Origin: Lytechinus pictus
Lineage: Eukaryota
NCBI RefSeq assembly: GCF_037042905.1
Contig: NC_087248.1
Span: 20,832,001 to 20,896,000 of the forward strand
Length of the DNA: 64,000 nucleotides
Direction: 5' to 3'
Shown: piece after piece, positions 5,123 through 51,024 of the stretch
How positions within the stretch are numbered: position 1 is the first letter of the stretch
Layout: every line of letters begins with the position of its first letter
The notes under the pieces: model-generated
What the model was told of the DNA's origin: nothing
Databases searched by the model: none
What the model saw: the letters and a program-made list of their open reading frames with translations, nothing else
Translations under genes and position numbers: made by a program

Positions 5123-8377
<3,255 letters not shown>

Positions 8378-9524: not shown

Positions 9525-9982
9525 CATGAAAATTATGTAAAATAAGAAAGTTATAACATTTTAAAGTTTCGCTTAATTTCTCAAAACAGTTATATGCACA
9601 TCCTGTTTGGTATGCAAATGAGGGGACCGATGACATCACCCACTAACTGTTTCTTTTGTATTTTATTATATGCAATTTCATCATTTTAACATTTTGTGGT
9701 TCCAGCAAGGGGTTCCTAATTGTCAAATTCGTAAAAATTGAAATATTGTATAATTCACACAATAAAAAACAAAAGAAATAGTGAGTGAGTGACATCATCG
9801 ACTCTCTCATTTGCATATCACTGAGTTGAGCATAGAACTGTTTTATGAAAAATAAGCGAAACTTTAAAATGTCATAACTTTCTTATTTAACATCCAATTT
9901 TGATGAAGTTTTCAGCGTTATTCATGTTTGATTTTTCTCTATTTATTTAAATCAACTCTTTCGGGGGTGGACTTGACCTTAA
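9525..9982. mobile_element. Partial family C-related Kolobok-like MITE
   Basis: Shares ATGTAAAATAAGAAAGTTAT..TTTTAAAGTTTCGCTT and the GGGTGGACTTGACCT end with family C. Confidence 0.7.
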
Positions 9983-11850: not shown

Positions 11851-12014
11851 GTATGCGGATAGGACAGAATGACTTGGGACAGTAGATTAACAAGCCGATA
11901 ACGATCCAGTATGCAGTACACAGGCATAGTATTCTTTTAAAAATTGTTATAATTGTAAAATTTATGTTTTAAGTAATGAACCCTCCACATAAGAGGTAGA
12001 ACAAATACAAAAAG

Positions 12015-12560
12015 TGATGATGATGATAATGATGATGATGATGGTGATGATGATGGCGGTGTAGTGGTTGTGGNNNNNNNNNNNNNNNNNNNNNNNNNNN
12101 NNNNNNNNNNNNNNNNNNNNNNNNNNNNNNNNNNNNNNNNNNNNNNNNNNNNNNNNNNNNNNNNNNNNNNNNNNNNNNNNNNNNNNNNNNNNNNNNNNNN
12201 NNNNNNNNNNNNNNNNNNNNNNNNNNNNNNNNNNNNNNNNNNNNNNNNNNNNNNNNNNNNNNNNNNNNNNNNNNNNNNNNNNNNNNNNTATAATGGTTAC
12301 GAAATCCTTCCATTGTTCAAGATTGCCGAATTCATCATCTGCATTCATGACTCCGATGATGATGATGGTGATGATGATGATTATGGTGATGATGGTGATG
12401 ATGATGATGGCGATGGTGATGACGATGATGGCGGTGGTGGTGGTGTTGATGGTGATGATGATGATAATGATGATGAAGATGATGATGATCAAGATGATGA
12501 AGATGATGATGATGATGGTGGTGGTGGTGGCGATAATAGTGATGATGTCAATGTTGATGA
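12015..12560. repeat. (GAT)n/(GGT)n microsatellite spanning an assembly gap
   Basis: Trinucleotide repeat on both sides of the N run 12074-12288. Confidence 0.9.
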
Positions 12561-13200
12561 ACCTGATGGTCCCGATCATCTCCATCAACCGAATAATTAT
12601 TATGGTCATATTGCGCTAAAAGCACAATTCATCTATTTCCTCCGGTAAAAATTTTGATTTAAAGTCTCCAAAAAGACAATTAAGGAGAGTATTCCAATCC
12701 CGGGATTTCAGTATGTTTAAGAAGTCAATGATGTTTGTCAATTTGTGTATTTTTTTTCTCTAATGTGCATCTTCTTTGTACTGTTTTGCTTGTACCATGG
12801 TCCAAGCATTTCGTGCAGTGCCGCAAAAAAATAAAGAGCCACATTAAAAAAAAGAAGAATGTCACCTTCAGGACCTATCAAAGAAGGTTTTTATAATGAT
12901 TACGAAATCCTTTCATTGTTCAAGATTGCCGAATTCGTCATCTGCATTCATGACTCCGAAACGAAAATCGAACGCCATGATGCCTTAGCACGGCTATAGC
13001 AACCAACTCAATGGCGTTCTTTGTGTTTACTATAGGCAAGGTAAACAAAAGCTTTCGCCATGTGTGCGAGTGTGTTGTAAATGCGTGTATCGCTTTTTGT
13101 ATTGCTCTAGCCATTTTCGCAATTATTTCTCAACTTGCTGATAGACACAGCGCACGTCAGAAGCATTTTGTGGAAATTGTGTACACCTTGATTTATCATC

Positions 13201-17576
<4,376 letters not shown>

Positions 17577-18549: not shown

Positions 18550-19129
18550 AGGCCAAGTCCACCCAAAAAATGCTGATTTGAATAAATAGAGAAAATCAAT
18601 CTAGCCCAACACTGAAAATTTCATCAAAATCGGATGTAAAATAAGAAAGTTATGACATTTTAAAGTTTCGCTTATTTTTCACAAAACAGTGATATGCACA
18701 TTTGAGTGACATATGTCCCTCACTCACTATTTCTTTTGTTTTTTATTGTTTGAATTATACAATATATCATTTTTTACAAATTTGACAATAATGACCAACT
18801 TGACTGAACCATATAGTATTAAACAATCCTAATTCCACATGTTCAGGGAGGAATTAATCGTTGTTTCACTTGGCAATGAGAAAATTAGAATATTTCATAT
18901 TTCATATAATAAAATACAAAAGAAATAGTGAGTGGATGATGTCATCAGTCTCCTCATTTGCATACAGACCAGGATTTGCATATAACTGTTTTGTGAAATT
19001 AAGCGAAACTTTAAAATGTCATAACTTTCTTATTTTACATTCGATTTTGATGAAATTTTCAGTGTTATGTTTGTTGGATTTTTTTCTCTTTTTATTCAAA
19101 TCAACTTCTTGTTGGAGTGGACTTGTCCT
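18550..19129. mobile_element. Kolobok-like MITE family C, full length
   Basis: TTAA|AGGCCAAGTCCAC ... GTGGACTTGTCCT|TTAA. Confidence 0.88.
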
Positions 19130-20509: not shown

Positions 20510-21320
20510 ACCTTTTTTTGTTTTCAATTCTTTTTACTTTTCTTGTTGTTTTTCTTCTTTTCTACATCATCTTATTTTTAATCTTCAGTAATAAATCTTC
20601 TTTTTCTTATTTTTTTCTTCTTCCTTTTATTCTCTTCTCCTCCTTCTTTTTCCTCTNNNNNNNNNNNNNNNNNNNNNNNNNNNNNNNNNNNNNNNNNNNN
20701 NNNNNNNNNNNNNNNNNNNNNNNNNNNNNNNNNNNNNNNNNNNNNNNNNNNNNNNNNNNNNNNNNNNNNNNNNNNNNNNNNNNNNNNNNNNNNNNNNNNN
20801 NNNNNNNCTTCTTCTTCTACTTCTTTCTTTTTTCCCTTTCCCCCCCTTTTTTTCTTCCTCTTCTTCTCCTTCTTCCTTTTCTTCATGTTATTTTTCTTCT
20901 CTNNNNNNNNNNNNNNNNNNNNNNNNNNNNNNNNNNNNNNNNNNNNNNNNNNNNNNNNNNNNNNNNNNNNNNNNNNNNNNNNNNNNNNNNNNNNNNNNNN
21001 NNNNNNNNNNNNNNNNNNNNNNNNNNNNNNNNNNNNNNNNNNNNNNNNNNNNNNNNNNNNNNNNNNNNNNNNNNNNNNNNNNNNNNNNNNNNNNNNNNNN
21101 NNNNNNNNNNNNNNNNNNNNNNNNNNNNNNNNNNNNNNNNNNNNNNNNNNNNNNNNNNNNNNNNNNNNNNNNNNNNNNNNNNNNNNNNNNNNNNNNNNNN
21201 NNNNNNNNNNNNNCTCCTTCCTTTTCTTCATGTTATTATATTTCTTCTCTTCTTTATTATCATCATCATCATCATCACCATCATCATCAATCACCACCAC
21301 CACCATTATCATCATCATTA
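20510..21320. repeat. (CTT)n/(CAT)n low-complexity region with two gaps
   Basis: Pyrimidine-rich trinucleotide repeats around N runs. Confidence 0.85.
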
Positions 21321-21585
21321 TCTATCACTAATGTCGCCATTATTGTGATCTGCCCATTATCATTGACTAAGGCATGTTGAGGTTTTAAATAAAAGTGAAT
21401 ACTATACCCCCAATCATGGGTTGTCATCGACTTAGAGGGAAAAGTGGCAACCGGATAAAGAGGAATTAATGTATCTAAAAATATGATATTATGTCCTCTA
21501 TGATTCAACATTCATTGCCATGGCGACTGCCATGATGCAACGCGCGTTAATTGCATCGAACATGTTTTTCGAAGTTGTTAATTAA

Positions 21586-25191: not shown

Positions 25192-26166
25192 ATGTTGACA
25201 GCGTCTACCAATGGAACATCGTCGCCGACTTGGTCGTGGGATGCGATTGATTGGGGCGATTGGTACACACTGCTTCAGTTAGTTCCTGCATGTTTAGGAT
25301 GTCTTGGCAACCTAGTGGTCATGGCTATCCTGTTTCCACGAAAGTCACAGAATAGATCTACAGACACCCTGATCGGCCATCTTGCTGTGGCCGACTTCCT
25401 AACATCAGTGTTTCTTCTACCAATCCCTTCGGTTAGGAATGTTCCCCAGAACTGGGCTGGGTTCTTATATTGTGGCTTCATACATACAAAGAGCTGCCGT
25501 CTGGTATGCATCTTCTCCTCGATTTACATACTCGTCGTTATCTGTTGCGATCGCTACGTTGCGGTTGTCTACCCTCTGCAGTTCAATCGTTGGCTCACGA
25601 GAGGGCACTGCACCTTGTCCATTGCTCTCACCTGGCTGGTATCCTCCGTAGGCCAATTCACAGCGACTTTCACCACTCTGGATATATCAAAGAGCGTTTG
25701 CAGGTTGTCGTCAGGGTATTATAGTCGGGTCATCGGTGGTTCTCTGAATTTCTTCTTTGTTTTCGCTTTACCCGCCCTGGCCATGCTCACCTTACAACTC
25801 ATTGTTGCCCATAAGTTGCTCCGGAAGTCCCGACGTTTCAACTCCGCAATGAATGGCCCATCTGGTATCCCTTCTTTTCACTTGGTTGCACGACGGAAGG
25901 TGCTGAAGTTGACGGCCATCGTAGTCGCCATATTTGTGACCACCGTTGGCCCCAACCAAATAAGTTACTACTGCTACAACGTCGGGATGTTGCCTCGGGA
26001 ATACCTTTCGGGAGAGTTTCATCGCTTCACATTTCTTCTCGCTTGCTACAACTCGTGCGCCAACCCATTTATATACGCCTCACAGAACAAGAAGTTCAGG
26101 GAAGCATTTTTGAACATGTGGCCGATATGGAAAAGGCCCAAGTCTCGTGACCTTCCTATATTTTAA
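25192..26166 (+). CDS. Intronless rhodopsin-family (class A) GPCR, 324 aa, peptide-receptor-like/lineage-expanded type
   Basis: Seven hydrophobic segments; N-terminal N-glycosylation sequon NGT; GN in TM1 (LGNLVV); LAVAD in TM2; TM3 Cys and CDRY motif; W in TM4; P in TM5; NSCANPFIY (NPxxY); helix 8 KKFREAF. Confidence 0.9.
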   Translation: MLTASTNGTSSPTWSWDAIDWGDWYTLLQLVPACLGCLGNLVVMAILFPRKSQNRSTDTLIGHLAVADFLTSVFLLPIPSVRNVPQNWAGFLYCGFIHTKSCRLVCIFSSIYILVVICCDRYVAVVYPLQFNRWLTRGHCTLSIALTWLVSSVGQFTATFTTLDISKSVCRLSSGYYSRVIGGSLNFFFVFALPALAMLTLQLIVAHKLLRKSRRFNSAMNGPSGIPSFHLVARRKVLKLTAIVVAIFVTTVGPNQISYYCYNVGMLPREYLSGEFHRFTFLLACYNSCANPFIYASQNKKFREAFLNMWPIWKRPKSRDLPIF

Positions 26167-32650: not shown

Positions 32651-35002
32651 TGTCAGACTAACGATTAGGAAGCGAAGAATGTATTTCCAGTATTTTTCCT
32701 TGAATATAAATCATATTATGATAGATTTGAATGCTTAGTGATAGCAGCATATTAATTTGAAAAACTGAAATGTTTTCACTGCAGTCAATGTGATAAAAAT
32801 CGAAATATCTTTACATTTTCCATATAAGGATACTTATTTGCATAATATGCAAATGAGGCAGATTTGCTTGATTTTTTAAATAAAGACATTGAACTTATTT
32901 ATTCATCATGAACTTTTGTTCAAAATTACTTGCTGTGGACATTTAATTTGTAATCTTTGGATTAATTTCCTAATTTTCTATTATTTATAATGGCTAATTT
33001 GCATAATATGCAAATTAATTTTCAGGCATTGGGATGAATTCTCATGCTTAGTGATATAGTAGCATATTAATGTCAACATTAATGAAATGTTTTCAAGCAG
33101 TCTATATGAGAAAATTCACAATATCTTGACATTTTTTCAATTTAAGGATGCTTATTTGCATAATATGCAAATGAGGTAGAATTTTTTGCACTTTTGATTA
33201 AAAACATTGAATTCAGTTATTTATCATGAATTACCATTCAAATTAAATTATTTTGGACATTTAATTTGTAATCTTTGGATTATTTCCCTTCTTTTTCTAA
33301 TTTTTCATGGCTAATTTGCATAATATGCAAATTTCATAAATTTCCACTGCTTGGATTTCTTGGGACTTTTAGTATGTTGTTTAGGGGACCTTCCTGGAAA
33401 GCATATCAGTGGAATATCTTGTGTTGCAATTAGTGGTGGGTTACCCCCCTATTCTGGCTAGATTGACTGGACTATGGCGTCATGGCGGTCTGGTTCTAAA
33501 CAAATGAACCTGCCGAATAAAAGCTTGCGATTTTCATAGGAGAAAATGGCTACTATTAGATTTGATAGTGTTAAATTTCTGCGTTAAAAGACCCAATCAA
33601 TATCTTTTCTTATTAATCCTAATTGACCTTTCTAAGTATTCCATATAGACTATGATATTACACTAAACCATATACTCGCTGTAATTAATTCTTGGTATTG
33701 TGCATTGGCAGTGACCGCGAGGGGGGGGGGGGGGGACTCCTCCTCCATTTTAAAATTGTGTACATTAGCATATGGGGAGTTGAAGCATATGTATTGCACC
33801 GGGAAATAGTTTTACCATTTACCATTTATCACGGGCTACCATAGCCTTCCCATGTTTCCTTCCTGATGATAATCTACAAACAATCACTTCCGGCAACGTG
33901 TTTTCCTCTTATTGTTATTTCCTGCAAAGGCAAGTGTCCTTCATGTTCTTCTTTGAATTGTTATCATGGAACTTAGATCATTGTCCACTGAGATAAAAAA
34001 AAAAAAGTAAGAGTGGGGGTAGCTATATATCCCAATTCAATTTCAATAAATTTTAATCCAGTCAAAACACACGTATATTAAAAATGCATTTTTTCCAAGT
34101 CTCGATGTCAAGGTACAAAATACAACTGCGATAGGAAGGTCCAAATAGAATATTGCAAATATTGCACAGAGAATATCAATAAAAATAATGAATAACCAAA
34201 AATATGATAGATATGTCCCCAAAATGTTTTGAAAATGAAAGTGCAAATAGCACGAATTAAATCACCATTTTCGGGTTGTTTATATATGTCCGTCATGAGA
34301 TCCAATAAATCCCCCCCCCCCCGTAATAAAAAAATTATCATGCCACTGTCATGTAAGAAAAATCGAGGGGAAACAGGTTTTGGTTTTGTTTAATGTCACA
34401 TATCCGTGATAAGTACACACATCGTGACAAACGTTCTGCCACAACACTCTCTTAATATTAATCTTCATTATTTGATTATAAGATATACAATTCACGCTCT
34501 CAATATTATTTTAGATATTTTGAGCTTAATTCCAACCTAGATATATTGAAGGAGGATTCAGATACATGGAATAGTGTTGAGATAAATTCCATTTATATAA
34601 TCGAAATGAGTCCCTCCTCATTTTTTTCTTCACAAGACTGCTTGCGATTATTTCTGAATCCATGCACCCCTTACTCCAAATAAACTCTAAAATTGATTAA
34701 TTGATTGATTAATTAATTCATTGATTGACTGACTGATTGTTTCTTTGATTGACTGTTAGATTGATTTATTGATTGATGTTCCATTCACATTTTCAGAAAA
34801 TGAGCAAAATGCGATTTGTTACAAAATCGGATCGCGAACAGTCGTAAGGTGTGCGGTGGCCTTTAGATAACAGTAACTGTCATTCTGCAGGTATAGCTAC
34901 CAATGAAATCTCGCATTTGATTGGATGCAGGGCCCTGCTATACCACAGTTAATATAATGCTAAGTAAGTGTATTACGTTATGGAACTGACCCAAGATCTT
35001 AA

Positions 35003-35606
35003 AGGGATGGTCCAGGCTGGAAATATACTTATCTCAATAAATAGAGTGAAATTCACAAAGCAAAATGCTGAAAATTTGATCAAAATCAGATAACAAATAG
35101 CAAAGTTATTGAATTTTAAAGATATGCATTATTCCGGTGGAACAGTTCCAGGCATGTCTTTATGAATATTCATTAGGTGGGCCGATGATGTCATATCCCC
35201 ACTTGTTCTTTTGTATTTTATTATATGAAATCAGGTTTATTCAAAATTTTTCTACCAAGAACTAAAACAATCGGATTGACAGCTGATTAAGTGCATTAGT
35301 TATTTATTGCTGCAACTTATTTCATCATAATGGATACACGTCATTTACACTTGTATGAAAAAATGAAATATTTATGATTTCATGTAATGATATAAGAAAA
35401 GGGAAAGTGGGGATGTGACATCATCAGCCCATCTATTGAATATTCATGACGATGTGCATATAACTGTTTTCACAAAATAATGATAAACTCTAAAATTCTA
35501 TAACTTTGTTATTTGTTATCCGATTTTGATGAAATTCTGAGCATTTTGCTCTGTTAATTTTACTCTATTTATCTAGATATAAATATTTTCAGCCCGGACT
35601 ATCCCT
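35003..35606. mobile_element. Kolobok-like MITE family D, intact
   Basis: TTAA|AGGGATGGTCCAGGCTG ... CAGCCCGGACTATCCCT|TTAA. Confidence 0.9.
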
Positions 35607-35728
35607 TTAATAAACAGATCGACAATAGATCAATGAGATAATTTTTTATATTATAATATTTGTGCTATCATTGCTGAATAACGAATTTTAATTGAGCCTA
35701 TAATATCTAAAAGGGGATCCACACTTTA

Positions 35729-36213: not shown

Positions 36214-36506
36214 ATAAATAATAAGTAAATAAATAAATGATATAGGATTTGTATAGCGCACGTATCCACCTTGCTAGCTGCTCAAGGCGCTCCTGTATTA
36301 CCCCGACTAAGCTAGCCTACTAATTCCGGTGCTCACCAGTTTTTTGAGGAATTACTTCCTGCCGGAAACTCATCTACCGCACCTGGGTCGAGTGCAGCAC
36401 AATGTGGATAAATTTCTTGCTGAAGGAAAACACGCCATGGCTTGGAATCGAACCCACGTCCTTCAGATTGAAAGATGAGTCTTAACCAATGGACCACAAC
36501 TCCCCC
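36214..36506 (-). mobile_element. tRNA-derived SINE with L2-like tail
   Basis: A and B boxes at 36445-36500; tail AGCGCCTTGAGC...GCGCTATACAA plus (TTTA)n; flanking repeat CACTAAT. Confidence 0.8.
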
Positions 36507-37339
36507 ACTAATGAAATGACCAAATGTAATCCTCGATTTAACAATATCATGAATATGCCCTATCCTAAAAAACCTAACCCTATATCTTAGACGAAATATA
36601 AGCCCAGAGCAATTGTCGTGTCACCAAATACATATGTCATCGAAATTGGAAGGGGGATGGGGTCTCAAATTTATCCTTTTTTGTAAGTATAGGAATGGAT
36701 CTTCGCCTATTCCCCTCCTTTTCATCCACGAAATTGCCAATATCATAGGCATATACAAGCTGTAGATTTCCTAAAATTCAATTAACAAGTTCATTTTCAT
36801 AAAAAAAATCGAGGTAAATAAAAATTAAACATTTTCTTGGAAGTGACTCGCCTGTCCTTTAAAGGGATGGTCGAGGCTGGGAATATTTATATCTCAATAA
36901 ATAGAGTAAAATTCACAAAGCAAATTGCTAAAAATTTGATCAAAATTGGATAAAAAATAAGGAAGTTATTAATGATAAAGATTCGCATTATTCTGGTGAA
37001 ACAGTTCTAGGCATGTCTTTATGAATATTCATTAGGTGGGCTGATGATGTCATATCCCCACTTTTTCTTTTGTATTTTATTACATGACATTTGGTTAATT
37101 CAAACATTTTCTACCAAGAACTAAAACAATTGGATTGACAACCGATTAAGTGATCAAATATTGCCGCAACTTGTTTCATCATAATGGAGACACGTTATAC
37201 ACATGTATGAAAAAATGAAACATTTATGATTTCATGTAATAACATAAGAAAATAGAAAGTGGGGGTATGACATCATCAGTCCATCTAATGAATATGTGGA
37301 GCGTTGTGGCCCAGTGGATTAGTCTCCGGACTTTGAAAC

Positions 37340-40300
37340 TATGAGGCGCCGAATGTACCAATATTATATAGAACAATTATTTGTTATATAATCATTATTT
37401 ATTAAATAATAACTATTATTTATATATAATTTACATTTTATTTGTAAATAACTACTATTATATAAAATATCATTTCTAATTATTTATATATAATTCCAAG
37501 TAATACTTCATTATTTGTAAATAATAATAGTTCGACATTCCATTATTTATAAATAATGATTATTTGTGTTTCATTATTTATAAATAATGATTATTTGTTT
37601 TTCATTATTTATAAATAATGATTATTTGTTTTTCATTATTTACAAATAATGATTATTTGTTTTTCATTATTTATAAATAATGATTATTTGTTTTTCATTA
37701 TTTATAAATAATGATTATTTGTTTTTCATTATTTACAAATAATGATTATTTGTTTTTCATTATTTATAAATAATGATTATTTGTTTTTCATTATTTATAA
37801 ATAATGACTATTTGTTTTTCATTATTTATAAATAATGATTATTTGTTTTTCATTATTTACAAATAATGATTATTTGTTTTTCATTATTTATAAATAATGA
37901 TTATTTGTTTTTCATTATTTATAAATAATTTGTTGAGTTTTCCATTATTTATAAATAATGATTATTTGTTAAATAATGAAAACGTCTACTTCATTATTTA
38001 TAAATAATTTTTTCGAGTGCACCATTATTCTCATTATTTATAAATAATCATTATTTAATGTTCGAGTTTTCCATTATTTATAAATAAAGATTATTTGTTA
38101 AATAATGAAATATCTACTTCATTATTTATAAATAATAATTTTGTTTCAATATCCCATTATTTATAAATAATCATTATTTATAAACAATTTTTACAGTTTG
38201 CCATTATATACAAATAATCATTATTTATATACAAATAACCATTATTTATTAAATAATGCCATTATTTATTAAATAATGCCATTATTTATTAAATAATGCC
38301 ATTATTTATTAAATAATGGAAAACTCGCTATAACATGCAAATGTGGGACCGCCCATGATATGAATATTCATGATGCGATTTCCTTTTTCGTGATTTTTCT
38401 TCACAAATATTTGTCCATTTCCTCTTCATAATGACATTTCTTGAAGCAATTTTCTAGGGATATGGTCTGATTGTAATATTCTTCATTTTCTATATAACTT
38501 CGTCTTCGTAGAAATATCAAAAAGTGTAATTTTATACGATTTTTCCTACAGTTCACAATCCCCATAGGCGCGCGTGTATCGTAGGGACAACCGGTGAATC
38601 GACGGAGTGCTCTTCATCGAAATACTACGTTGGTTGGTCCCCGGAAGTGGCGGGCGGAATTTAGCCCGAATCCTCGATGGAAGTCGATCAAGTGCATATG
38701 AGCTGAGAGAGTGAAATATCAGTGTACTTGTACAGGCCCTTCTACTTTTTATAAATATTTCTTGTTGCTTTTTTTGTTAAGTTAATTTTTCCTGGTGTAG
38801 AGATAAGTTTCAGTTCTAATAATGCACTTCAAATACATTTTGGAGTGTCTGTTTGAGGCGTTTAAGCGTTTGGGGCGATTTCACCCTGGCCCCAAAATGC
38901 TCGCAACGACAATACGGGGGCATGATGACCCCTAAATTTTTAAAAACTTATTTTTCTATTGAAAATTATCACAAAATTCACCAAAAGTGTGCAAGAAAGC
39001 CTTCGTATTTCACTTCAAAAAGTGCCCAAATGACAAGCTTGGTCGCTTCGCTGTGTCGCTTTCAACTTGAGAACGTTTACGCGTCTGCTTCCCCCCCCCC
39101 CCTCCTCCGAAAGAAATTCTGTATACGGCCATGCTCTAAAGAGCCTGGCACATTGATTTATGTATACTTTCATTTTCATTACTTTTATCTCATTATCAAC
39201 ATGGCCTTACGCAGAATTTTTTCCAGGGGGGCCGGGGCCGGAGCATGACGCGCGTAAACTTTCTCAAAAAAATCTTGAAAGCGAGATAGCCACGGGACCA
39301 AGCCCAAATGACAAGCTTAATTGGTCGCTTCGCTGTCTCGCTTTCAACTTGAGAACGTTTACGCGCGTCTGCCCCCACCCCCCGAAAGAAATTCTGTGAA
39401 CGGCCATGCTCAAAAGAGCATATGGCACATTGATTTATATGTACTTTTCATTTTCATTATTTTTATCACATTATCATCATGGCCTTACACAGAATTTTTA
39501 CCGGGGGGGGGGGGGAGCAGCTAGGACGCGCGTAAAGCGAGACAGCGACGCGACCAAGCTCAAATGACAAGCTTGGTCGCTTCGCTTTTTCAAGATTTTT
39601 ATTAGAAAGTTTACGCGCGTCCTGCTCCCCCCACCCCCCCCCCCCGGAAAAAATTCTGCGTAAGGCCATGATGATAATGAGATAAAAATAATGAAAATGA
39701 AGTATACATAAATCAATGTGCCAGGCTCTTTAGAGCATGGCCGTATACAGAATTTCTTTCGGAGGAGGGGGGGGGGGGGAAGCAGACGCGTAAACGTTCT
39801 CAAGTTGAAAGCGACACAGCGAAGCGACCAAGCTTGTCATTTGGGCACTTTTTGGAGTTTTAAAAGTGAAATACGAAGGCTTTCGTGCACACTTTTGGTG
39901 AATTTTGTGATAATTTTCAATAGAAAAATAAGTTTTTAAAAATTTAGGGGTCATCATGCCCCCGTATTGTCGTTGCGAGCATTTTGGGGCCAGGGTGAAA
40001 TCGCCCCAAACGCTTAAACGCCTCAAACAGACACTCCAAAATGTATTTGAAGTGCATTATTAGAACTGTATTTAGAAATATTTATAAAAAGTAGAAGGGC
40101 CTGTACAAGTACACTGATATTTCACTCTCTCAGCTCATGTGCACTTGATCGACTTCCATCGAGGATTCGGGCTAAATTCCGCCCGCCACTTCCGGGGACC
40201 AACCAACGTAGTATTTCGATGAAGAGCACTCCGTCGATTCACCGGTTGTCCCTACGATACACGCGCGCCTATGGGGATTGTGAACTGTAGGAAAAATCGT

Positions 40301-41478
40301 ATAAAATTACACTTTTTGATATTTCTACGAAGACGAAGTTATATAGAAAATGAAGAATATTACAATCAGACCATATCCCTAGAAAATTGCTTCAAGAAAT
40401 GTCATTATGAAGAGGAAATGGACAAAAATTTGTGAAGAAAAATCACGAAAAAGGAAATCGCATCATGAATATTCATATCATGGGCGGTCCCACATATGCA
40501 TGTTATAGCGAGTTTTCCATTATTTAATAAATAATGGCATTATTTAATAAATAATGGCATTATTTAATAAATAATGGTTATTTGTATATAAATAATGATT
40601 ATTTGTATATAATGGCAAACTGTAAAAATTGTTTATAAATAATGATTATTTATAAATAATGGGATATTGAAACAAAATTATTATTTATATAAATAATGAA
40701 GTAGATATTTCATTATTTAACAAATAATCTTTATTTATAAATAATGGAAAACTCGAACATTAAATAATGATTATTTATAAATAATGAGAATAATGGTGCA
40801 CTCGAAAAAATTATTTATAAATAATGAAGTAGACGTTTTCATTATTTAACAAATAATCATTATTTATAAATAATGGAAAACTCAACAAATTATTTATAAA
40901 TAATGAAAAACAAATAATCATTATTTATAAATAATGAAAAACAAATAGTCATTATTTGTAAATAATGAAAAACAAATAATCATTATTTATAAATAATGAA
41001 AAACAAATAATCATTATTTGTAAATAATGAAAAACAAATAATCATTATTTATAAATAATGAAAAACAAATAATCATTATTTGTAAATAATGAAAAACAAA
41101 TAATCATTATTTATAAATAATGAAAAACAAATAATCATTATTTATAAATAATGAAAAACAAATAATCATTATTTGTAAATAATGAAAAACAAATAATCAT
41201 TATTTATAAATAATGAAAAACAAATAATCATTATTTATAAATAATGAAAAACAAATAATCATTATTTATAAATAATGGAATGTCGAACTATTATTATTTA
41301 CAAATAATGAAGTATTACTTGGAATTATATATAAATAATTAGAAATTATATTTTATATAATAGTAGTTATTTACAAATAAAATGTAAATTATATATAAAT
41401 AATAGTTATTATTTAATAAATAATGATTATATAACAAATAATTGTTCTATATAATATTGGTACATTCGGCGCCTCATA
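37340..41478. mobile_element. 4.1-kb foldback (giant-TIR) DNA transposon, IS3EU-like termini
   Basis: TATGAGGCGCCGAATGTACC ... GGTACATTCGGCGCCTCATA; arms about 37340-39285 and 39580-41478; 6-bp TSD TGAAAC (37334-37339 and 41479-41484). Confidence 0.9.
37541..37950. repeat. 30-bp tandem array in the left arm (mirror copy about 40860-41280)
   Basis: Unit TTCATTATTTATAAATAATGATTATTTGTT containing a 20-bp palindrome. Confidence 0.9.
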
Positions 41479-41926
41479 TGAAACAGAGGTTCGTGGGTTC
41501 AAATCCCAGCCATGGCGTAGTTTCCTTCAGCAAGAAATTTACTCAACCCTGGCAGGAATTTATTCCTTGAAATGCCACAGCGCTGTGAAAGGCTGCGGGG
41601 CTAAAGCCAGGGTAATAATATCCAAGTCCTTTGGAAGCACATAGAGACGTTATTTATAATGTGTTATGCGCTAAACAAGAACTGACTATTATTATATTCA
41701 TGACGATGTGCATATAACTGTTTTCACAAAATATTGACAAACTTTAAAATTCATCAACTTCGTTACTTGTTATCCTATTTTGATGAATTTTCAGCATTTT
41801 GCTCTATGAATTTTACTCTATTTATTTAGATATAAATATCTCCAGCCCGGACCATCCATTTAAAACGATTCCCAAATCACCCCTTCCTGTTCCTGGCGTT
41901 GGTTAACCCCGGATGTTAAAAGTTAG

Positions 41927-42125: not shown

Positions 42126-51024
<8,899 letters not shown>

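What the first reader, a model, noticed from the sequence alone, without database searches (positions are those of the whole stretch)
37334..41484. 4.1-kb near-total palindrome: modular foldback transposon with TAT..ATA ends and a 6-bp TSD
Seen: two inverted arms of about 1.9 kb around a middle of about 300 bp, with a precise 6-bp duplication (TGAAAC) and no transposase ORF. Each arm runs unique terminus, AT-rich 30-bp and 20-bp arrays, GC-rich unique domain, then a ~280-bp subrepeat. The arms differ slightly (a ~45-bp segment at 38762-38810 is replaced on the right, and the 20-bp array has 4 versus 3 copies), so it is not a perfect mirror. Established: TAY..RTA termini with a 6-bp TSD are the signature of the poorly studied IS3EU superfamily, and tandem outer plus unique inner domains describe Foldback/sea-urchin TU elements. 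Inference: a young non-autonomous IS3EU-type foldback family, possibly undescribed, able to form cruciforms or long dsRNA.
Basis: partly seen in the sequence, partly recalled or inferred. Interest (0 to 1): 0.8.

Follow-up and report, generated by a model that had tools for sequence, protein, structure and literature searches.

The report
Palindromic foldback transposon, IS3EU-like ends
This is a real 4.1-kb mobile DNA element that is almost entirely a mirror image of itself, encodes no protein, and has the end sequences and 6-bp insertion footprint typical of the little-studied IS3EU/GingerRoot transposons; it is a tidy new example of a known kind of element, not a new kind.

Summary
Window 37340-41478 (4139 bp) is a near-total palindrome. 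Its arms are about 99.5% complementary for about 1.85 kb, and the middle of about 320 bp is itself a degenerate palindrome around a loop of about 40 nt. It starts TATG and ends CATA and is flanked by an exact TGAAAC duplication.

The insertion splits one tRNA-like SINE. An intact SINE paralog in the window and hundreds of SINE contigs in three public runs read straight through a single TGAAAC, so the 6-bp duplication is real. In other runs a contig begins exactly at base 37340, and another joins an identical 228-bp terminus to a different flank. The element is therefore a discrete unit present at more than one locus.

There is no coding capacity. TA..TA ends plus a 6-bp duplication match published IS3EU/GingerRoot hallmarks, but no transposase link could be tested. 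Dada, Polinton, Mutator-type foldback elements and assembly artefact each fail at least one test.

I infer that the palindrome arose by fold-back duplication of one arm at a pre-existing imperfect inverted repeat and then transposed as a unit. First readers of this scan noted similar IS3EU-like foldbacks on other pieces of this genome; those notes are unchecked.

Verdict: real, young and non-autonomous; a new member of a known kind; moderate interest.

The parts
37334..37339 (.). left copy of the target-site duplication, TGAAAC
   Evidence: SINE contigs in runs X1, X3 and X14 end their match at 37339 and continue with the letters found at 41485 onward
37340..41478 (.). whole foldback element, 4139 bp, ends TATGAGG..CCTCATA
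   Evidence: a contig in run X2 starts exactly at 37340, and a contig in run X1 joins the identical terminus to a different flank
37340..37506 (+). left terminal domain, 167 bp, 16% GC; holds one copy of the 20-bp-array motif 54 bp from the end
37507..37970 (+). left array of 31-bp units x 15; each unit carries the perfect 18-bp palindrome CATTATTTATAAATAATG
37931..38180 (+). left 129-bp x 2 higher-order repeat built from the same motif
38199..38318 (+). left 20-bp array: 4 perfect units, one more than the right arm
38319..39023 (+). left inner unique domain, 38% GC, non-coding
38763..38810 (+). segment present in the left arm and absent from the right arm; contigs of three other runs carry it, so the right arm has a deletion
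39024..39846 (.). three tandem units of about 270 bp, each a rough palindrome (48% GC); local symmetry centres about every 134 bp
39427..39463 (.). central loop of the whole palindrome, inside the middle unit
39847..40517 (-). right inner unique domain; carries 9 extra bp at 39855-39863 and lacks the segment of about 48 bp
40518..40617 (-). right 20-bp array, 3 perfect units
40636..40887 (-). right 129-bp x 2 repeat
40848..41311 (-). right array of 31-bp units x 15
41312..41478 (-). right terminal domain
41479..41484 (.). right copy of the target-site duplication, TGAAAC
37296..37339 (+). 5' part of the host tRNA-like SINE (A-box-like GTGGCCCAGTGG), cut by the insertion
41485..41693 (+). 3' part of the same SINE (B-box-like GGTTCAAATCC)

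Best explanation
A young, non-autonomous foldback DNA transposon. It is moved in trans, by cut-and-paste, by a DDE transposase that makes 6-bp staggered cuts in the target. That transposase is most likely of the IS3EU/GingerRoot superfamily.

Shown:
- The element is a discrete 4139-bp unit with perfect TA..TA ends.
- It inserted into a SINE and duplicated TGAAAC.
- Its terminus sits next to a different flank in another data set.
- It encodes nothing.

Inferred:
- The transposase recognises the terminal domain.
- The roughly 20 copies per arm of an 18-bp palindromic motif may be extra binding sites. This is by analogy with the transposase-binding tandem repeats in the TIRs of Galileo, as cited in PMC4079207.
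- The element originated when one arm of a progenitor folded back at a pre-existing imperfect inverted repeat (the middle unit of about 270 bp) and was copied. That gave two identical ends, and the palindrome then transposed as a whole.
For: - Exact 6-bp TSD and perfect TIRs from the first base.
- The empty target is seen in a window paralog and in hundreds of SINE contigs of runs X1, X3 and X14 that run from 37339 straight into the 41485 sequence.
- A contig of run X2 starts exactly at 37340. A contig of run X1 has an identical 228-bp terminus behind a different flank that is absent from the window.
- No ORF and no Pfam match.
[quoted passage not shown] Rust-fungus IS3EU end in TAYGG..CCRTA with 6-bp TSDs (PMC12730594); this element reads TATGA..TCATA. 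GingerRoot has a 6-bp TSD and TA..TA ends (PMC6839031).
- For the origin: arm identity steps from about 99.5% down to about 87% at the edge of the central unit. At arm mismatches 37568, 38409, 39182 and 40496, other runs show a single state matching one arm or the other. Their contigs carry both the 52-bp and the 9-bp segments that each arm here lacks in turn. The ancestor was therefore a more perfect palindrome that predates this insertion.
- Fold-back at inverted repeats near breaks is an established route to inverted duplications (PMC6103520).
Against: - Only one complete copy with both flanks was available, so TSD length is n=1.
- No autonomous element with the same ends, and no IS3/IS481-like transposase, could be examined. 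The window has none.
- The TIRs here are about 1.9 kb, against 30-150 bp reported for IS3EU/GingerRoot.
- The fifth terminal base differs from the TAYGG consensus reported for the rust-fungus IS3EU families.
- The identity step could equally come from gene conversion between arms that does not reach the centre, rather than from a single fold-back event.
- Contig depths cannot be read as copy number.
Confidence: 0.6

Rival explanations
1. A foldback element mobilised by a different superfamily: Mutator/Foldback, P/Galileo-like, hAT, or an undescribed one that happens to make 6-bp duplications.
For: Most described foldback elements are assigned to Mutator, with P-superfamily exceptions, and foldback architecture is thought to evolve independently in several lineages (PMC4079207). 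First-reader notes report foldbacks with 8- and 9-bp TSDs elsewhere in this genome. The superfamily assignment here rests only on end letters and one TSD.
Against: The TSD is exactly 6 bp. An 8-bp reading needs a mismatch and makes the ends asymmetric by 2 nt. A contig that starts at 37340 and a second flank both keep TA as part of the element. Tetris and Mutator-type foldbacks make 8-10 bp (PMC4079207).
Confidence: 0.22
2. A Dada-type transposon that targets tRNA-like sequences; Dada makes 6-7-bp duplications inside multicopy small RNA genes.
For: The TSD is 6 bp. The insertion lies between the A-box-like and B-box-like motifs of a tRNA-derived SINE. Dada families make 6-7-bp TSDs in tRNA and snRNA genes (PMC3706591).
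Against: The Dada families described there lack terminal inverted repeats (PMC3706591), whereas this element is all inverted repeat. The second flank seen in run X1 is not SINE-like. The SINE is extremely abundant, so a chance hit is expected (depths). ARAGORN and Rfam find no tRNA at the rebuilt site or in the window.
Confidence: 0.03
3. An assembly artefact (a chimeric palindromic read or a collapsed interior), or an in-situ inverted duplication that never moved.
For: Palindromes are classic assembly errors. No single record in the four runs spans the whole structure. The right-arm deletion junction near 40069 was not covered in any of the four runs.
Against: Both flanks are the two halves of one SINE with an exact 6-bp duplication, which an artefact or an in-situ duplication would not create. 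Independent runs hold the terminus, the arrays, the inner domain and the central unit at 99-100% identity; contigs across 39302-39475 and 39336-39499 cover the centre. The two arms carry distinct private changes. No gap lies within 16 kb.
Confidence: 0.04
4. A remnant of a Maverick/Polinton element, which also has long TIRs and a 6-bp TSD, reduced to its inverted ends.
For: 6-bp TSD and kb-scale inverted ends; Polintons make 6-bp TSDs (PMC6839031, PMC10045372).
Against: Polinton termini are AG..TC, not TA..TA (PMC6839031). There is no trace of Polinton genes. The arms are built of short tandem arrays.
Confidence: 0.02

Closest known systems
[quoted passage not shown]
   Same: 5'-TA...TA-3' termini (TATG..CATA here, TAYGG..CCRTA in rust-fungus families), a 6-bp target-site duplication and terminal inverted repeats (PMC10045372, PMC12730594, PMC6839031).
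   Different: No transposase link could be shown. The TIRs are about 1.9 kb and modular, against 30-150 bp reported. The element is palindromic through its centre. No paper in the searched library connects IS3EU with a foldback architecture.
Foldback elements (Drosophila FB, Galileo, Tetris)
   Same: Very long TIRs divided into a flanking domain, an outer tandem-repeat domain and an inner unique domain. No coding capacity. The tandem repeats appear to derive from a subterminal motif, as proposed for Tetris TIR-220 (PMC4079207).
   Different: TSD is 6 bp, not 7 bp (Galileo, from memory) or 8-10 bp (Tetris). The ends are TA..TA. The middle is itself a palindromic repeat unit.
Sea-urchin TU elements (recalled from memory; original papers not read here)
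   Same: Inverted arms with outer tandem short repeats and inner unique domains around a variable middle.
   Different: As I recall, TU outer domains are 15-bp repeats and their TSD is 8 bp. Here the units are 31, 129 and 20 bp and the TSD is 6 bp. There is no sequence evidence of relationship.
Head-to-head Tc1 foldbacks reported by this scan in the same genome (note s1-306781)
   Same: A transposon converted into a two-identical-ends palindrome that still moves as a unit.
   Different: Different superfamily (TA target, transposase-coding arms). That note was not re-tested here.

Membership tests
IS3EU/GingerRoot | 6-bp target-site duplication | tested here: met
   TGAAAC on both sides. A single copy in the SINE paralog and in SINE contigs of three runs. 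Only one complete copy was available.
IS3EU/GingerRoot | 5'-TA...TA-3' termini (TAYGG..CCRTA in the rust-fungus families) | tested here: met
   TATGAGG..CCTCATA. TA is retained next to a different flank in run X1 and at the start of a contig in run X2. The fifth base is A, not G.
IS3EU/GingerRoot | terminal inverted repeats | tested here: met
   Perfect from base 1, but more than ten times longer than reported TIRs.
IS3EU/GingerRoot | IS3/IS481-related DDE transposase in the element or in an autonomous relative sharing its ends | not testable with these tools
   No ORF in the element and no transposase in the window. The rest of the genome cannot be searched. Note s1-311670 reports an IS3EU transposase elsewhere, but it is unchecked and its ends are unknown to me.
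Foldback elements (structural class) | very long modular TIRs with tandem-repeat outer domain, little or no middle, non-coding | tested here: met
Mutator-type Foldback | 8-10-bp TSD | tested here: not met
   6 bp
Dada | no terminal inverted repeats; family-specific insertion at one site in a multicopy small RNA gene | tested here: not met
   The element has perfect TIRs, and the second flank is not SINE-like. Feature taken from PMC3706591.
Maverick/Polinton | AG..TC termini and Polinton genes | tested here: not met
   TA..TA ends and no coding capacity
Sea-urchin TU elements | 8-bp TSD and 15-bp outer repeats (recalled from memory) | tested here: not met
   6-bp TSD and units of 31, 129 and 20 bp. 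The defining features were not verified in a paper read here.

The most novel reading that the evidence does not exclude
This animal genome has a general process that folds one end of a DNA transposon back at a short internal inverted repeat and copies it. The result is fully palindromic, two-identical-ends elements that remain mobile. It would act across superfamilies (IS3EU-like here, Tc1 in note s1-306781), and the transcripts of these elements would form long hairpin RNAs that feed silencing of the parent families.
Probability: 0.15. Interest if true: 0.7.

Novelty: new member of a known kind. Interest (0 to 1): 0.4.

Why it matters
IS3EU/GingerRoot is among the least studied eukaryotic transposon superfamilies. 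A well-delimited, young, foldback-type non-autonomous derivative would extend the list of lineages that independently evolve foldback architecture, so far mainly Mutator and P. It would also give a clean substrate, with two identical ends and arrays of a candidate binding motif, for studying that transposase.

The step in arm identity at a pre-existing inverted repeat is a readable trace of how such palindromes may form. A 4-kb perfect hairpin-former sitting in a repeat stack near tubulin genes is also a potential fragile site and a potential source of hairpin RNA.

Tried and rejected
- Exact-pattern scans for the terminus and for an inner-domain 26-mer found nothing in metagenome contigs, and a scan for the terminus found nothing in viral contigs.
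- The search of earlier findings by sequence returned nothing.
- ARAGORN on the window and on the rebuilt empty site, and Rfam on the window, found no tRNA or other RNA family. The SINE's tRNA likeness therefore rests on A-box-like and B-box-like motifs read by eye.
- Pfam scans of every ORF of 53 aa or more in the inner half (38319-39460) gave only sub-threshold noise.
- The larger ORFs scanned in the window are tubulin, a GPCR or unmatched; none is a transposase.
- The Dada hypothesis, prompted by the tRNA-like target, was rejected after reading PMC3706591.
- An 8-bp TSD parse (TTTGAAAC against TATGAAAC) was considered and rejected. It needs a mismatch, makes the ends unequal, and conflicts with TA being retained at other flanks.
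- Contig depths were not used as copy number, as the tool warns.
Full report
**1. What is there**

Window 37340-41478 is a 4139-bp near-total palindrome.
- The repeat finder reports arm pairs of 791 nt and 504 nt at 99% complementarity.
- The terminal 30-mer occurs exactly twice in the 64-kb window, once on each strand, with 0 expected from shuffles.
- A global alignment of the element with its own reverse complement gives about 99.5% identity from the ends to about 39170. That is about 10 substitutions in about 1765 aligned positions.
- Identity is about 97% to about 39230 and about 87% over 39228-39411. A poorly paired loop lies at about 39427-39463.
- Folded as single-stranded DNA, the inner 1.48 kb forms one continuous hairpin of -730 kcal/mol.

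**2. Anatomy**

From the outside in, each arm has:
- a 167-bp terminal domain at 16% GC;
- fifteen 31-bp units at 12% GC;
- a 129-bp x 2 higher-order repeat;
- a 20-bp array with 4 perfect units on the left and 3 on the right;
- an inner unique domain of about 700 bp at 38% GC.

The middle, 39024-39846, is three tandem units of about 270 bp at 48% GC.
- Each unit is a rough palindrome. Local symmetry centres recur about every 134 bp, at 39170, 39304, 39439.5, 39574 and 39702.
- The global centre falls in the loop of the middle unit.

Motifs:
- The 31-bp units carry a perfect 18-bp palindrome, CATTATTTATAAATAATG. It occurs 41 times in the window at 2 mismatches or fewer, every time inside the element.
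- The motif of the 20-bp array also occurs once in the terminal domain, 54 bp from each end. This suggests the arrays grew from a subterminal motif.
- Symmetry thus exists at three scales: 18 bp, about 270 bp and 4.1 kb.

Differences between the arms:
- a 2-bp indel;
- one extra 20-bp unit on the left;
- about 52 bp (38763-38810 region) against 9 bp on the right;
- 9 extra bp on the right, at 39855-39863.

**3. It is an insertion with a 6-bp duplication**

- The flanks read ...CTTTGAAAC|TATGAGG... and ...CCTCATA|TGAAAC AGAGG....
- Removing the element and one TGAAAC rebuilds a tRNA-like SINE with A-box-like GTGGCCCAGTGG and B-box-like GGTTCAAATCC.
- A diverged but uninterrupted paralog of this SINE lies at 36409-36500 on the minus strand.
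- In Logan contigs of three public runs, 6, 226 and 66 SINE contigs (runs X1, X3 and X14) end their match at 37339. They continue with AGAGGGTCGTGGGTTC..., the sequence found at 41485 onward.
- The target therefore held a single TGAAAC, and the duplication is exactly 6 bp.
- The SINE itself sits inside a MITE-like repeat of about 610 bp that has two intact copies in the window. This confirms the nesting that another note of this scan described (s1-325075).

**4. It is a discrete, multi-locus unit and not an artefact**

In one search:
- A 228-nt contig of run X2 begins exactly at 37340, as expected where several flanks converge on a shared element end.
- A contig of run X1 carries the identical 228-nt terminus preceded by 29 nt of a different flank...GCAAGTGAA. 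That flank is absent from the window.
- Runs under three other organism labels (X1, X2 and X14) hold the inner domain at 99.5-100% identity, and X1 and X2 also hold the terminus and arrays with no differences. A fourth label (X3) holds copies 1-10% diverged.
- Contigs across 39302-39475 (X1) and 39336-39499 (X3) cover the centre.

The arm differences, compared across:
- At arm mismatches 37568, 38409, 39182 and 40496, the other runs carry a single state that equals one arm or the other.
- Contigs in X1, X2 and X14 carry both the 52-bp segment and the 9 bp.
- The differences between the arms here are therefore private, derived changes. The ancestor was a more perfect palindrome that already existed before this insertion.

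An assembly chimera or an in-situ duplication would not recreate the two halves of one SINE with a 6-bp duplication. No gap lies within 16 kb. Two cautions remain: no single record spans the whole element, and the right-arm deletion junction was not covered in these four runs.

**5. No coding capacity**

- The longest ORF is 131 aa with a TTG start.
- Eight ORFs of the inner half give no Pfam family above noise.
- The larger ORFs in the window that were scanned are tubulins, a GPCR or have no Pfam match; there is no transposase.

**6. Which transposase**

Papers read here state the following:
- Rust-fungus IS3EU have TIRs longer than 30 bp ending in TAYGG..CCRTA, with 6-bp TSDs (PMC12730594).
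- GingerRoot elements make 6-bp TSDs, mostly have TA..TA ends and have 100-150-bp TIRs (PMC6839031).
- The same papers list the other makers of 6-bp TSDs. Polinton has AG..TC ends. Ginger2/TDD has TG..CA ends. Dada makes 6-7 bp, in tRNA and snRNA genes, but has no TIRs (PMC3706591).

This element reads TATGA..TCATA with a 6-bp TSD and perfect TIRs, so IS3EU/GingerRoot is the only described superfamily whose structural hallmarks it meets.

I considered Dada seriously because of the tRNA-like target. It fails on the TIRs and on the second, non-SINE flank. The SINE is so abundant (depths) that a chance hit is unremarkable.

Membership remains unproven. The defining transposase could not be tested, the TSD sample is n=1, and the TIRs are more than ten times longer than reported.

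**7. How it most likely works**

Shown: it is a non-coding unit with two identical ends that has inserted at two or more loci.

Inferred:
- It moves by trans-mobilisation, by a DDE transposase that makes 6-bp staggered target cuts.
- That transposase binds the terminal domain and possibly the roughly 20 motif copies per arm. The analogy is Galileo's transposase-binding tandem repeats, as cited in PMC4079207.

Origin, also inferred:
- The sharp fall in arm identity at the edge of the central unit is the signature expected if a break next to an imperfect inverted repeat was resected, folded back on that repeat and was copied.
- The evidence that the ancestor was an even better palindrome points the same way.
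- This route is established in yeast (PMC6103520).
- Concerted evolution of elongated TIRs by gene conversion is the alternative and cannot be excluded.

I put the transposon reading at about 0.9, the IS3EU-type assignment at about 0.6 and the fold-back origin at about 0.4.

**8. Expression**

Four RNA-labelled runs of one organism label (E) hold 64-67% of the sampled words of 38320-39440. This is a hint that the inner domain is transcribed.

**9. Novelty**

- Foldback elements are long known and are thought to arise independently in several lineages, mostly Mutator and sometimes P (PMC4079207).
- No paper in the searched library links IS3EU with a foldback architecture.
- First readers of this scan noted other '6-bp TSD, IS3EU-type' foldbacks and an IS3EU element with a transposase on other pieces of the same genome (s1-294541, s1-306904, s1-329297, s1-311670). 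All are unchecked.
- I file this as a new member of a known kind, of moderate interest.

Noticed in passing
window 34999-35610, 43794-44403, and split copy 36858-37295 + 41694-41864: A MITE-like repeat of about 610 bp with inverted ends (TTTAAAGGGATGG...CCATCCCTTTAA). Two intact copies are 85-89% identical to the copy that hosts the SINE and foldback. More diverged fragments lie at about 1300-1490, 9560-9950 and 18580-19100.
   Followed up: partly
window 37296-37339 + 41485-41693; paralog 36409-36500 (-): A tRNA-like SINE with A-box-like and B-box-like motifs, inserted in the MITE with a 4-bp ATAT duplication. Summed word depth reaches 10^5-10^6 in run X3, so it is a very high-copy family. ARAGORN and Rfam do not call it a tRNA.
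   Followed up: partly
window 7292-8377, 16368-17576, 50128-51024 (+): Three ORFs with Tubulin and Tubulin_C domains, which suggests a tubulin gene cluster, and a rhodopsin-family GPCR ORF at 25192-26166. The foldback stack lies between them.
   Followed up: no
window 38320-39440: RNA-labelled runs of one organism label (E) hold about two thirds of the sampled words of the element's inner domain. Runs of another label (C) hold about 14%.
   Followed up: partly
window 12074-12288, 13606-13977, 20657-20807, 20903-21213: Four runs of N (assembly gaps or masked stretches), all far from the element. Several mechanical ORFs listed around 11962-14022 and 20518-21348 run through them and are not real.
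   Followed up: no
window 38577 (run X3): Copies in run X3 carry a 14-nt insertion behind 38577 and several fixed differences. The inner domain therefore exists as a diverged subfamily under another organism label.
   Followed up: no
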